A DNA stretch of 64,000 bases. Origin: Macrostomum lignano. Lineage: Eukaryota. The translations under genes were made by a program, and so were the position numbers. The first letter of the stretch is position 1; the number at the start of each line of letters is the position of its first letter. The notes under the pieces were generated by a model. The model was given only the letters and a program-made list of their open reading frames with translations. It had not been told where the DNA came from and did not search any database. Where the stretch lies: contig NIVC01002565.1 of assembly GCA_002269645.1 (NCBI GenBank), positions 97,247 to 161,246 of the forward strand, read 5' to 3'. Below, piece by piece: positions 22,301 through 25,300 of the stretch.

Positions 22301-25300
22301 TTTCTATTTTAGTTCTTGATCTGAATCCTATTCTTTGTCTGTTGCATACCACCATCTCCCCACCCTTCTCTCCCCACCATCTTCTCCCACCCTCTTCTTC
22401 CCACCCTCTTCTCCCCACCCTCCTTCTCCCCACCCTCTTCTCCCCACCCTCTTCTCCCCACCCTCTTCTCCCCACCCTCTTTTCCCCACCCTCTTCTCCC
22501 CACCCTCTTCTCCCCATCCTCTTCTCCCAACCCTCTTCTCCCCACCCTCTTCTCCCCACCCTCTTTTCCCCACCCTTCTCTCTTCACCCTCCTCTCCCCA
22601 CCCTTTCTCTGCATCCTCTTATTATTATTCTTACAATCCATTCGTTAATTTACAGAGCTGCAGATTAGCGACATTCAGCAGAAGGCATTCAAATTCTTCA
22701 AAAAGAACGCAATGACAATTGAGATTCTGAAAAATGACAACCTGCAGAAGGTTCACTTTCGAGTGAGAAACAAGGCAAGTTCTGTCAAATGCTACTTATT
22801 AGTTAGTAAGTAGTATAAATAGTGCTATCAAACATAAAAAATCCACTACTGTAAATCTCATAATTCAGAATGTTCTCCGCGAAGAACTCAAAGAGAAGCT
22901 GAAATGGAACGTGGACAGGTCCTCGCCCAGCACGAAGATCCGCGACTTCATGGACTGGACTAAGGCTATACTGAAGGACATTCACTATCAGAAGAAAGTG
23001 CTGTCAAACCCGTTTACTATATTGCTGACTCGACTGTGGCTCATCTGGAACCACGCCGCAACCTTGACTGCCGTTATTATCAACCTAATCATGCTGATTG
23101 GCCTGGAAGCTACTGACACGCCCACAATGCTGGCGGACACTGGCATGTTTACCATTCCGGCCAAGTGAGCGCAATTTGATTAGCCTTTTTATTGCTCCTT
23201 TTTAAAAATGAAGTCTATTTTTTTGTACATGTTTACTCATTTCCAATAAAAGTTTGTGTGAGCCAATCAGATTCGAGGGAGTGAGAGCCAATCAAATTCC
23301 AGTGAGTCCGAGCCATTCAGATGCGAGTGAGTGTGAGCCAAGATCAGATTCGAGTCGACTGAGTGTAAGCCAATCGGATTCGAGTGAGTCTGAGACAATT
23401 AGACTCGAATGAGTCACAGCCAATCAGATACCAGTGAGTGTAAGCCAATCAGATTCAAGCGACTCTTAGCCAATCAGATTCGAATGAGCCACAGCCAATC
23501 AGATTCCAGTGAGTGTAAGCCAATCAGATTCAAGCGACTCTTAGCCAATCAGATTCGAGTGAGTCACAGCCAATCAGATTCCAGTGAGTGTGAGCCAATC
23601 AGATTTAAGCGACTCTTAGCCAATCAGATTCGAGTGAGTCACAGCCAATCAGATTCTAGTGAGTGTGAGCCAATCAGATTTGAGTGATCCAATCAGATTC
23701 GAGTGGTTGTGAGCCAATCAAATCCATGTGGAAATGAGCCAACCAGAATCCCAGCCTCAGGCTGAGCAATCTGTTCCCAACTCCAATTCTGATCAGCGAA
23801 TCTGCCCGCTGGAAGTCGCAGTTCGAGCACCTGGAGATGTGGAAGGATGCATTCGCGTACACCATGGACATCCTGGCCATAGTCATCCTGTTGGCCTTCT
23901 TCGTTGCCAACCATCCGGAGCCGCCGAACGTGCGCCGCATCCGGGATCGGCTGCGCCGCCTGCGCCGCGCCAAAGCCGACGAAGAGGACGACCCGGCCGA
24001 CTGCAGGGACCGCGGCAGCGAGGGCGGCAACAAACTGGCTGTCAACCTGTTCAGCATAGCCACGCTGTACTACTTGTCCTTCGCCGCCTGCGCCTTTGCT
24101 GGCACTTTTTACTGTCCGTACTTCTTCGCCTTCCACCTGCTGAACATGGTCAACAATAACCAGCTGCTGCAGGGAGTCATTCAGGCTGTCACCATGAATG
24201 GTGAGACAGTCGGCTGTCTCTAGTCAGTTGTTTCTAGTCAGTTGTTTCTAGTCAGTTGTTTCTAGTCAGTTGTCTCTAGTCAGTTGTTTCTAGTCAGTTG
24301 TCTCTAGTCAGTTGTCTCTAGTCAGTTGTCTCTAGTCAGTTGTCTCTAGCCAGTTGTCTCTAGCCAGTTGTCTCTTGTCAGTTGTCTCTAGCCAGTTGTC
24401 TCTAACCAGTTGTCTCTAGCCAGTTGTCTCTAACCAGTTGTCTCTAGCAGTTGTCGTTTGAGCCTTGTCTCAAACGTGGAGGCAGTCAAAATATAACAAA
24501 TTCCCCACCGAACCTGCTCAGGCCTCTCCCTGATCTGGGTGTCTGTGCTGGGCATCGCCATCATGTACCTGTTCTCCGTGCTGGCTTTCGCAAGGCTTCG
24601 CCGAGGTTTCGGCGGCCTCATGTTCTGCTCGGACCTCAGCCAATGCTTTGTGACCGTGTTGCGCTTTGGACTCATTGGGGATCTGTTCGAGGTGAGGACC
24701 GCAGCAGTGCCCTGAGTCTGGCTTCTGAGGCAGTTCACTACTTTATGTATCACCCTACTGTCGCTCCCGATGCTTCGCTGCCTGTCATTTTTCCCTCTAC
24801 TGTCTCCTCTGTCACTCTACTGTTTTCTCTGTCACTCTACTGTCTCCTCTGTCACTCTACTGTCTCCTCTGTCACTCTACTGTCTCCTCTGTCACTCTAC
24901 TGTCTCCTCTGTCACTCTACTGTCTCCTTTGTCACTCTACTGTTTTCTTTGTCACTCTGATGTCTGCACTGTCACTCTACTCTCTCCTCTGTTACTCTAC
25001 TGTCTCCTCTGTCACTCTACTCTCTTCTCTGTCACTCTACTGTTTTCTCTGTCACTCTACTCTCTTATCTGTCACTCTACTGTATTCTCTGTCACTCTGA
25101 TGTCTGCATTGTCACTCTACTCTCTTCTCTGTCACTCTACTGTCTCCTCTGTCACTCTACTGTCTCCTCTGTCACTCTACTCTCTTCTCTGTCACTCTAC
25201 TGTTTTCTCTGTCACTCAGATGTCTGCATTGTCACTCTACTCTCTTCTCTGTCACTCTACTGTCTCCTCTGTCACTCTACTGTCTCCTCTGTCACTCTAC

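What the first reader, a model, noticed from the sequence alone, without database searches (positions are those of the whole stretch)
24640..24691. IP3R-like channel lacking the GGGVGD selectivity filter (GLIGD instead)
Seen: within a single exon the pore reads CFVTVLRFGLIGDLFE, while the downstream S6 gate (LNIIFGIIVDTFSELR) is canonical. Known: IP3R has GLRSGGGVGD and RyR has GVRAGGGIGD, among the most conserved motifs in the superfamily. This is a clean 5-residue deletion of RSGGG, in frame and not at a splice junction. Inference: a separate clade of Ca2+-release-type channel with remodelled selectivity or conductance. Non-canonical IP3R-like clades may already be catalogued in invertebrates, so novelty needs checking, but I know of no functional characterisation.
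Basis: partly seen in the sequence, partly recalled or inferred. Interest (0 to 1): 0.78.

Follow-up and report, generated by a model that had tools for sequence, protein, structure and literature searches.

The report
IP3R-B channel with non-canonical pore
This is an intact flatworm gene of the little-studied IP3R-B branch of the IP3-receptor/ryanodine-receptor channel family, whose pore loop carries a conserved RFGLIGDLFE motif instead of the usual GGGxGD filter; the motif is real and shared across spiralian phyla, but the branch is already catalogued and the loop is not simply shortened by a deletion.

Summary
The sequence is as described. Window 24644-24691 (+) encodes CFVTVLRFGLIGDLFE, and the S6 gate LNIIFGIIVDTFSELR lies in the next exon.

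It belongs to an intact 46-exon, 2828-aa gene (1390-29621, +) with IP3R-type architecture. The genome is Macrostomum lignano or a very close relative.

The missing GGGxGD is not an assembly error or a species-specific decay. R[FY]GL[IV]GDxF[DE] is nearly invariant in 22 distinct proteins, those that carry names coming from flatworm, nemertean, annelids and molluscs (NJ bootstrap 98). This clade contains one of the two Helobdella genes published as IP3RB; the other carries the same kind of loop. IP3RB is absent from vertebrates, fly and C. elegans. Helobdella also has two canonical IP3RA genes and a RyR.

The "clean 5-residue deletion" is not supported. The spacing from the pore-helix Cys to S6 is 48 residues, the same as in canonical IP3Rs. 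Aligners disagree on whether the filter is substituted or shortened with compensation.

The beta-domain IP3 contacts (TTGR) are lost. The Ca2+-sensor acids, zinc finger and S6 gate are kept.

Most likely this is a Ca2+-regulated, probably not IP3-gated, ER cation channel with a remodelled filter; its function is untested. It is a new member of a known kind, of moderate interest.

The parts
1390..29621 (+). Whole IP3R-B-type gene: 46 exons, 2828 aa, no internal stop. 44 introns are GT-AG and 1 is GC-AG. Exons: 1390-1478; 2362-2435; 5081-5472; 6079-6156; 6602-6682; 6770-6867; 6951-7038; 7117-7204; 7318-7659; 7867-7955; 8033-8158; 8295-8420; 8503-8688; 8815-8937; 9014-9118; 9248-9439; 9586-9718; 9824-9942; 10051-10312; 10966-11123; 11199-11311; 11658-11760; 12622-12934; 13050-13509; 13956-14228; 14591-14710; 15018-15101; 15170-15449; 15990-16278; 16372-16510; 16582-16764; 17031-17187; 17274-17471; 18507-18563; 18660-18878; 19257-19529; 20587-20880; 21565-21673; 22656-22774; 22869-23164; 23797-24200; 24522-24691; 25359-25709; 27330-27467; 28620-28862; 29469-29621.
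   Evidence: Homology-guided splice model. It is colinear with Tubulanus P0081 (aa 155-2726, 34% id) and with the M. lignano paralog P0345 (74% id). Pfam finds Ins145_P3_rec, MIR, RYDR_ITPR x2, RIH_assoc and Ion_trans. A few acceptor choices in the middle of the gene (e.g. 23797, 9248, 16372) are less certain.
24522..24691 (+). Exon 42: S5 helix, short luminal loop, pore helix and filter motif (LSLIWVSVLGIAIMYLFSVLAFARLRRGFGGLMFCSDLSQCFVTVLRFGLIGDLFE).
   Evidence: tblastn hits of four homologs end exactly at 24691. M. lignano UniProt A0A1I8I413 (P0110) is 100% identical over 43 aa of this exon.
24644..24691 (+). The reported motif CFVTVLRFGLIGDLFE (aa 2519-2534). The non-canonical filter core RFGLIGDLFE is 24662-24691.
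   Evidence: Clade conservation over 22 distinct sequences: R 22/22, Y/F 22/22, G 22/22, L/V, I/V/M/L, G 22/22, D 18/22, F 16/22, E/D 21/22.
24692..25358 (+). Intron 42, with GTGAGG donor and CCGCAG acceptor. It holds a 20-bp minisatellite at 24795-25316.
25359..25709 (+). Exon 43: luminal turret (NMVPREDSPTFDS, 25359-25397), S6 with gate motif LNIIFGIIVDTFSELR (25455-25502), and the C2H2 zinc finger CFICS...HVRNEH (25542-25619).
   Evidence: The junction DLFE|NMVP matches NLVP in M. lignano, annelid and mollusc homologs.
7318..8688 (+). Exons 9-13, encoding the region equivalent to the IP3-binding core. HLRIREVDQ (7320-7346) replaces FLRTTLRQ. KEKQKLLRN (8388-8414) corresponds to RERQKLMRE. 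NSRKN (8620-8634) corresponds to DYRKN.
   Evidence: HMMER alignment to ITPR2 and the MAFFT clade alignment.
19257..20880 (+). Exons 36-37 (ARM3 / RIH_assoc), holding the Ca2+-activation-site equivalents. ICDGQH (19350-19367) puts D at hIP3R3 E1882. VNEFCAG (19512-20589, split by an intron) keeps E at E1946.
   Evidence: HMMER alignment to hIP3R3 chains 6dqj/7t3p. Identifying E1882/E1946 as the Ca2+ site rests on my knowledge of the IP3R3 cryo-EM literature.

Best explanation
The window holds a complete, apparently functional gene for an IP3R-B-type intracellular channel of Macrostomum lignano or a very close relative.

Shown here:
- The protein has the IP3R domain order and no RyR-specific domains.
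- It has a 6-TM channel domain with pore helix, loop and S6 at the canonical spacing.
- The GGGxGD filter is replaced by RFGLIGDLFE. This motif is nearly invariant in a monophyletic clade whose named members are flatworm, nemertean, annelid and mollusc proteins. That clade contains one of the two Helobdella genes published as IP3RB; the other carries the same kind of loop.
- Of the canonical IP3 contacts, the beta-domain set (T266, T267, G268, R269; also K249 and Y567) is lost. R265, K508, R511, R568 and K569 are kept. The same pattern is seen in the Capsaspora and choanoflagellate relatives.
- The two Ca2+-sensor acidic positions (as D and E), the C2H2 zinc finger and the S6 gate Phe are kept.

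Inferred:
- It assembles as a tetrameric ER cation channel.
- It is opened or tuned by cytosolic Ca2+, and possibly by an unknown ligand, rather than by IP3.
- A bulkier pore loop carrying two acidic residues per subunit (D2531, E2534) gives a conductance and/or divalent-versus-monovalent selectivity different from IP3R-A and RyR.
For: Gene and architecture:
- Intact 8.5-kb CDS over 46 exons, colinear with full-length homologs.
- Pfam architecture.
- The AF2 model of the paralog P0001 best matches IP3R1, then IP3R3, then RyR (8ear E=1e-19, TMq 0.54).

Origin:
- M. lignano A0A1I8I413 is 100% identical over exon 42.
- Paralogs are 69-77% identical.

Clade:
- Motif census.
- NJ tree: 98% for the motif clade, 92% with the Saccoglossus/HHG clade, 84% for the wider group with Capsaspora CAOG_04510 and Salpingoeca.
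- Taxon names.

Literature (PMC7992859 and its supplement):
- Helobdella has two IP3RA genes (GGGIGD), one RyR and two IP3RB genes.
- By elimination the IP3RB genes are Helro_162842.. (HYGLVGDIFS) and Helro_176697.. (RYGLVGQIFD). Their gene numbers 162842 and 176700 are the HELRODRAFT numbers of my hits P0058 and P0014.
- IP3RB is absent from vertebrates, fly and C. elegans.
- ip3rb2 is specific to T neurons in Hirudo.

Gating residues:
- IP3-contact residues.
- Ca2+-site residues.
- S6 and zinc finger.
- IP3R-B is cited as 'could not bind IP3'.
Against: - No expression or functional data for this gene.
- Single Gly substitutions in the canonical filter give dead pores (PMC7939385). A conducting pore with this motif is therefore not guaranteed.
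- Five of the basic IP3 contacts remain, so weak or altered inositol-phosphate binding cannot be excluded.
- Deep nodes of my tree (IP3R-A versus IP3R-B versus RyR) are unsupported (bootstrap 0-14). The tree uses only 212 channel-domain columns and NJ.
- I could not read Alzayady 2015. Equating Capsaspora CAOG_04510 with their CO.IP3R-B is therefore an inference.
- The AF2 pore loop is only moderately confident (pLDDT 65-77) and is a monomer of a paralog.
Confidence: 0.72

Rival explanations
1. Non-conducting (pore-dead) IP3R-like protein. It keeps the fold but acts as a scaffold, a Ca2+ sensor or a regulatory subunit rather than as an ion channel.
For: - In canonical IP3Rs, single substitutions of filter glycines (IP3R2 G2498S; IP3R1 G2506R/A) abolish activity without affecting IP3 binding.
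- All three glycines of the GGG run are absent here.
- From my recollection of the Alzayady 2015 abstract, Capsaspora IP3R-B gave no IP3-evoked Ca2+ release.
Against: - The replacement motif is itself under strong constraint: R, G and G invariant, acidic residues 18/22 and 21/22, across four phyla.
- The S6 gate, the pore-helix Cys pair and the 48-residue spacing are also constrained. That is hard to explain if nothing passes through the pore.
- The Capsaspora assay tested IP3 as the trigger, not conduction as such.
Confidence: 0.15
2. It is still a bona fide IP3-gated Ca2+ release channel. The filter differs in sequence but is functionally equivalent.
For: - R265, K508, R511, R568 and K569 equivalents are kept, and R504/R506 are conservatively K.
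- The Ca2+ site and gate are kept.
- An IGD triplet plus a downstream acidic residue resembles RyR's IGDE.
Against: - T266/T267/G268/R269 are replaced by E-V-D-Q, which includes acidic residues in the phosphate pocket. K249 becomes A and Y567 becomes S.
- R269W alone strongly reduces IP3 binding.
- The same loss is shared with the whole IP3R-B group, which is reported as unable to bind IP3.
Confidence: 0.1
3. Assembly or annotation artefact, or a decaying species-specific copy of a canonical IP3R.
For: - The window is very repeat-rich, with minisatellites flanking the pore exon.
- The motif ends exactly at a splice donor.
Against: - The same motif occurs in an independently predicted M. lignano protein and in at least two paralogs.
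- It also occurs in Tubulanus, Helobdella, Paralvinella, Capitella, Patella, Pomacea, Candidula, Lymnaea and Octopus.
- The 2828-codon ORF has no stop codon or frameshift.
- The phylogeny separates it from IP3R-A.
Confidence: 0.02

Closest known systems
IP3R-B / IP3RB subfamily (Alzayady et al. 2015; leech ip3rb1/ip3rb2 of Heath-Heckman et al. 2021, PMC7992859)
   Same: - Same clade in my tree as Helobdella HELRODRAFT_176700, one of the two genes used as IP3RB in that paper. The other, HELRODRAFT_162842, is a 55%-identical N-terminal hit.
- Same pore-loop type: RYGLVGQIFD and HYGLVGDIFS.
- Same loss of the TTGR IP3 contacts.
- Same IP3R-like length and domain order.
   Different: - This is a flatworm (Macrostomum) member.
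- It is one of at least three paralogs in that genome.
- It carries Phe instead of Tyr in RFG.
- It has a Gly-rich insertion in the N-terminal domain.
- Nothing is known of its expression.
Capsaspora owczarzaki CAOG_04510 and Salpingoeca rosetta PTSG_02461 (unicellular holozoan IP3R-B-like proteins)
   Same: - Same wider clade (bootstrap 84).
- Same pattern of kept and lost IP3-binding residues.
   Different: - Salpingoeca keeps a canonical-type GGGLGE filter.
- Capsaspora has GLENGLAS, with a loop 2 residues shorter (46).
- The RYGLIGD motif is restricted to the spiralian clade.
Canonical IP3 receptors (IP3R-A; vertebrate ITPR1-3)
   Same: - Domain architecture and fold.
- 48-residue spacing from pore helix to S6.
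- S6 gate, zinc finger and Ca2+-sensor acids.
   Different: - No GGGVGD filter.
- No Asp at the D2550-equivalent position in the ungapped alignment.
- Beta-domain IP3 contacts lost.
- Very short S5-P luminal loop.
- Separate phylogenetic position.
Ryanodine receptors
   Same: - Short S5-P loop.
- An IGD followed by an acidic residue.
- GNxRxNALYF-like motif in the N-terminal solenoid.
- Probable reliance on Ca2+ rather than IP3 (partly inference).
   Different: - About 2800 aa rather than about 5000 aa.
- No SPRY or RyR-repeat domains in Pfam.
- No GGGIGD.
- PDB sequence matches to IP3Rs are stronger than those to RyRs.

Membership tests
IP3R/RyR superfamily | N-terminal Ins145_P3_rec + MIR + RIH domains, RIH_assoc, and a C-terminal 6-TM Ion_trans domain | tested here: met
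   All are above Pfam gathering scores. Foldseek top hits are IP3R1, IP3R3 and RyR.
IP3R/RyR superfamily | GGGxGD/E selectivity filter after the pore helix | tested here: not met
   The pore loop reads RFGLIGDLFENM and has no Gly run. Capsaspora CAOG_04510 and the HHG-type clade in my set also lack GGGxGD/E, so this feature is not universal in the superfamily.
IP3R/RyR superfamily | S6 gate motif and post-S6 C2H2 zinc finger | tested here: met
   LNIIFGIIVDTFSELR and CFICS...HVRNEH align with ITPR2.
Canonical IP3 receptor (IP3R-A) | Full set of IP3-coordinating residues (R265, T266, T267, G268, R269, R504, K508, R511, Y567, R568, K569) | tested here: not met
   R265, K508, R511, R568 and K569 are kept. 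R504 becomes K. T266/T267/G268/R269 become E/V/D/Q and Y567 becomes S.
Canonical IP3 receptor (IP3R-A) | Groups with metazoan IP3R-A in a phylogeny | tested here: not met
   Canonical IP3R-A sequences (vertebrate, coral, insect, rotifer) form a separate cluster. The window protein lies in the 84%-supported IP3R-B-like group.
IP3R-B (IP3RB) subfamily | Groups with published IP3RB genes and with holozoan, hemichordate and spiralian members; distinct from IP3R-A and RyR | tested here: met
   The bootstrap-98 clade includes Helobdella HELRODRAFT_176700; the bootstrap-92 clade adds Saccoglossus. HELRODRAFT_162842 was not in the tree: it is a 55%-identical N-terminal hit, and its published sequence carries the same loop type. 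Those two Helobdella genes are the paper's two IP3RB genes by elimination. Caveat: NJ on the channel domain only.
IP3R-B (IP3RB) subfamily | Does not bind IP3 (reported for Capsaspora IP3R-B) | not testable with these tools
   There is only a sequence proxy: the same lost contacts as in the Capsaspora and Salpingoeca relatives. The statement is cited.
Ryanodine receptor | About 5000 aa with SPRY and RyR-repeat domains, and a GGGIGDE filter | tested here: not met
   2828 aa, no SPRY or RyR domain hits, no GGGIGD.

The most novel reading that the evidence does not exclude
The spiralian RYGLIGD-type IP3R-B proteins form a third functional class of the IP3R/RyR superfamily. They would be ER channels gated by Ca2+ or an unknown ligand instead of IP3 or ryanodine-type coupling. 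Their glycine-free, doubly acidic filter would give a distinct ion selectivity or conductance, for example a low-conductance or monovalent-preferring leak or release pathway. They would be used in specialised cells, such as the leech touch neurons where ip3rb2 is enriched.
Probability: 0.3. Interest if true: 0.7.

Novelty: new member of a known kind. Interest (0 to 1): 0.4.

Why it matters
IP3R-B is the one branch of the IP3R/RyR superfamily that vertebrates, flies and C. elegans lack. For that reason it has almost no physiology attached to it.

This analysis shows three things:
- A whole spiralian sub-branch has exchanged the superfamily's hallmark GGGxGD filter for another strictly conserved motif.
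- It has kept the loop length, the gate and the Ca2+ sensor.
- It has lost half of the IP3 pocket.

Together these give a concrete, testable hypothesis for what IP3R-B does differently. They also provide natural material for asking what the glycine run contributes to permeation.

The finding is not unique to this window, however. The sequences are public and the subfamily is named. The value lies in the annotation and the hypothesis, not in the discovery of a new kind of channel.

Tried and rejected
1. I later found that my query lacked the six residues NMVPRE at the start of exon 43. With the full loop the gap disappears in phmmer. I therefore no longer treat as evidence for a deletion.
2. 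My first guesses for exon 2 (window 2065-2188, two reading frames) were wrong. tblastn with M. lignano P0052 placed it at 2362-2435.
3. I first read the gene as ending at 27488. Homologs showed two further C-terminal exons.
4. P0062 (M. lignano) was tested as a possible canonical IP3R-A of the same genome. It shows the IP3R-B residue pattern instead. Whether M. lignano has an IP3R-A remains open.
5. P0203 (4930 aa) was considered as a RyR outgroup. It is an unnamed, protist-like protein with GIRSGGGIGE. I used RyR1 from PDB 8vjj instead.
7. Alzayady 2015 could not be opened by DOI or by PMC id.
8. Full-text searches for GLIGD / RYGLIGD found no paper discussing this motif.
9. The deep branching order of IP3R-A, IP3R-B and RyR could not be resolved with my NJ tree (bootstrap 0-14).
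Full report
**1. Observation**

On the + strand, window 24644-24691 reads TGC TTT GTG ACC GTG TTG CGC TTT GGA CTC ATT GGG GAT CTG TTC GAG, which is CFVTVLRFGLIGDLFE. It is followed at once by GTGAGG. The stop-free segment around it reads ...LSLIWVSVLGIAIMYLFSVLAFARLRRGFGGLMFCSDLSQCFVTVLRFGLIGDLFE. A downstream segment carries ...FDSFFWMAIFHIVFFILITTVGLNIIFGIIVDTFSELRNMKWTAEVDMRDNCFICSRSNYDFEHHGQGFDYHVRNEHNMW. The reported residues, their frame, the single-exon location and the canonical S6 and zinc finger are therefore real. 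No GGGxGD occurs in the loop.

**2. The gene**

With these I built a 46-exon model spanning 1390-29621 (+). It encodes 2828 aa without an internal stop. All introns are GT-AG except one GC-AG at 22775.

- The model is colinear with the full-length nemertean homolog P0081 (aa 155-2726, 34% identity). It is also colinear with a 1696-aa M. lignano paralog (74% identity).
- Pfam finds Ins145_P3_rec, MIR, two RIH domains, RIH_assoc and Ion_trans. It finds no SPRY or RyR-repeat domain.
- The pore motif lies in exon 42 (24522-24691). The turret, S6 and zinc finger lie in exon 43 (25359-25709).

**3. Source organism**

- The best hits are Macrostomum lignano proteins: 69-77% identity for the paralogs.
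- One M. lignano UniProt entry, A0A1I8I413 (P0110), is 100% identical over 43 aa of exon 42. It is identical again over exon 43, apart from a mis-predicted internal gap.
- The window therefore comes from M. lignano or a very close relative. The pore sequence has been predicted independently.

**4. Is the motif an artefact or a clade feature?**

Every close homolog carries it.

- In M. lignano the paralogs read RFGLIGDLF[ED].
- RYGLIGD[LIM]F[ED], or a close variant, occurs in these taxa:
  - Nemertean: Tubulanus.
  - Annelids: Paralvinella, Capitella, Helobdella.
  - Molluscs: Patella, Pomacea, Candidula, Lymnaea, Octopus.
- Over 22 distinct sequences the pattern is: R 22/22, Y/F 22/22, G 22/22, L/V, I/V/M/L, G 22/22, D 18/22, x, F 16/22, E/D 21/22.
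- I built a neighbour-joining tree of 166 channel domains (212 trimmed columns, 100 bootstraps).
  - The motif group has 98% support.
  - Its sister is a group holding Saccoglossus plus an HHG[FLI]xEG-type mollusc/annelid clade; together they have 92% support.
  - The wider group, with Capsaspora CAOG_04510 (GLENGLAS) and Salpingoeca (GLLSGGGLGE), has 84% support.
  - Canonical IP3R-A sequences from vertebrates, a coral, insects and rotifers cluster elsewhere.
  - Deeper nodes are unsupported.

Assembly error and species-specific decay are therefore excluded.

**5. Known family**

Heath-Heckman et al. 2021 (PMC7992859) follow Alzayady et al. 2015. They state the following:

- Bilaterians ancestrally had IP3RA, IP3RB and RyR.
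- IP3RB was lost in vertebrates and is absent from Drosophila and C. elegans.
- Hirudo ip3rb2 is specifically expressed in touch (T) neurons.
- The physiology of IP3RB remains to be determined.

Their supplementary sequences show the pore loops:

| Helobdella gene | Pore loop | Class |
|---|---|---|
| Helro_71321.. | GVRAGGGIGDE | RyR |
| Helro_194357.. | GLRNGGGIGD | IP3RA |
| Helro_123029.. | GLRNGGGIGD | IP3RA |
| Helro_162842.. | HYGLVGDIFS | IP3RB, by elimination |
| Helro_176697..176700 | RYGLVGQIFD | IP3RB, by elimination |

The last two carry the gene numbers of my hits P0058 (HELRODRAFT_162842) and P0014 (HELRODRAFT_176700). The window gene is therefore an IP3R-B member. At least one spiralian genome that carries this pore type also keeps canonical IP3Rs and a RyR. 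I found no paper in the held library that discusses the motif itself. I could not open Alzayady 2015.

**6. Deletion or substitution?**

From the pore-helix Cys (QC) to the S6 motif there are 48 residues in the window protein and in 19 of the 22 clade members. There are 48 in canonical IP3Rs (P0224, P0280), 48 in Salpingoeca, 47 in RyR1 and 46 in Capsaspora. There is no net deletion.

The aligners disagree on how to place the filter:

| Method | Alignment of the filter |
|---|---|
| phmmer, full loop | Ungapped: GLIGDLFENM against GLRNGGGVGD |
| MAFFT | 2-residue gap |
| hhalign, profile-profile | GL-----IGD, with five compensating residues in the turret |

- The gap in my first alignment was caused by omitting NMVPRE.
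- I modelled the paralog P0001 with AF2 (mean pLDDT 77; 65-77 in the loop). The pore helix ends at ...RFGL. A 3-residue coil IGD follows, then a one-turn helix LFEN, then a 9-residue coil, then S6.
- That model mildly favours a short filter plus a longer turret. However, it is a monomer of moderate confidence.
- The safe statement is that the Gly run is gone, the loop length is kept, and the route (substitution, or deletion plus compensation) is unresolved.

**7. Gating machinery**

Residue numbers are IP3R1 numbers, mapped through the alignment to human ITPR2.

- R265 is kept.
- T266/T267/G268/R269 become E/V/D/Q.
- K249 becomes A.
- R504 and R506 become K.
- K508 and R511 are kept.
- Y567 becomes S.
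- R568 and K569 are kept.
- The same kept/lost pattern holds in all IP3R-B-like proteins examined, including Capsaspora and Salpingoeca.
- R269W alone reduces IP3 binding. IP3R-B is cited as unable to bind IP3.
- The positions equivalent to hIP3R3 E1882 and E1946 are D and E. That these form the activating Ca2+ site rests on my knowledge of the cryo-EM literature.
- The S6 motif keeps the gate Phe, and the C2H2 zinc finger is intact.
- Foldseek places the model nearest to IP3R1 (8ear, E=1e-19, TMq 0.54), then IP3R3, then RyR.

**8. Mechanism**

The best reading is a tetrameric ER cation channel of the IP3R-B type.

- It is probably regulated by Ca2+ and not by IP3.
- Its pore loop replaces flexible glycines by I-G-D-L-F-E, with two conserved acidic residues.
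- In canonical receptors, single Gly substitutions in the filter kill conduction. The clade must therefore either build the filter differently or not conduct.
- The strict conservation of the new motif, of S6 and of the loop length argues for a working, remodelled pore.
- The rivals, with the tests that would settle them, are listed under Rival explanations: pore-dead scaffold, still IP3-gated, and artefact.

**9. Novelty and score**

The subfamily is known and named, and its sequences are public. This gene is a new (flatworm) member. I did not find the clade-wide filter replacement, the unchanged loop length or the residue pattern described in the literature I could search. They sharpen a testable hypothesis, but they are not a new kind of system. 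I give 0.4.

Noticed in passing
window 1489-63369 (e.g. 17552-18411, 20980-21523, 24215-24455, 24795-25316, 25775-26482, 27695-28539, 30682-31625, 38012-40140, 54309-55728): The window is very rich in long, highly regular mini- and microsatellite arrays, with periods of 4-111 bp, up to 155 copies, and 29 TRF rows with score >=300. Many lie in introns of the IP3R-B gene, including both flanks of the pore exon.
   Followed up: partly
window ~2560-2790, ~10430-10700, ~15650-15930: Three copies of a dispersed repeat sit in introns. They share translated strings such as SRSYCAAHLKAAYGCSVQ...LAPILQLGELKQCRVKCLAQGHKLF...ESNPRP. They look like a SINE or tRNA-derived element; this was not analysed.
   Followed up: no
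window 22775 (intron after exon 39, 22656-22774): The one non-GT donor in the gene is AAG|GCAAGT, a consensus GC-AG intron. It is supported by homologs that read ...FRVRNK|NVLREE.
   Followed up: partly
window 5140-5340 (exon 3) and 28680-28715 (exon 45): Low-complexity coding insertions. One is a Gly/Val/Ser-rich stretch of about 55 aa in the N-terminal domain, much longer than in the M. lignano paralog P0052. The other is a run of 11 Gly in the C-terminal tail.
   Followed up: no
window 51124-53511, 56018-56545, 57163-57741 (+): A second cation-channel gene lies downstream. It has ankyrin repeats plus a TRPM2-like domain (E=1.6e-6) and an Ion_trans segment, with a TRP-box-like LLNVIVAMF...WLFERY. 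It is probably an ankyrin-containing TRP channel.
   Followed up: partly
window 35227-35649 (-): An exon encoding a protein-kinase catalytic core ([26 protein letters not shown]...[14 protein letters not shown]; Pkinase E=1.6e-31). From memory it resembles Nemo-like/MAP kinases.
   Followed up: partly
window 44738-46780 (+): ORFs that include a KH_1 RNA-binding domain (E=3.4e-10), probably part of a multi-KH protein gene.
   Followed up: partly
related proteins P0017-P0019, P0024, P0025, P0028, P0034, P0078, P0079 (molluscs, annelid): A second spiralian IP3R-B sub-clade has an even more divergent loop, HHG[FLI][VS][ED]G.Y, with no GD at all. M. lignano P0062 shows its N-terminal residue pattern, so the flatworm probably has both sub-clades.
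   Followed up: partly
related protein P0065 (Plectus sambesii): A nematode protein has an IP3R-B-like N-terminal pattern (RPITT in place of RTTGR). IP3RB is reported absent from C. elegans, so this may be retention in a basal nematode or a mis-annotated fusion (it also carries PF02931).
   Followed up: no
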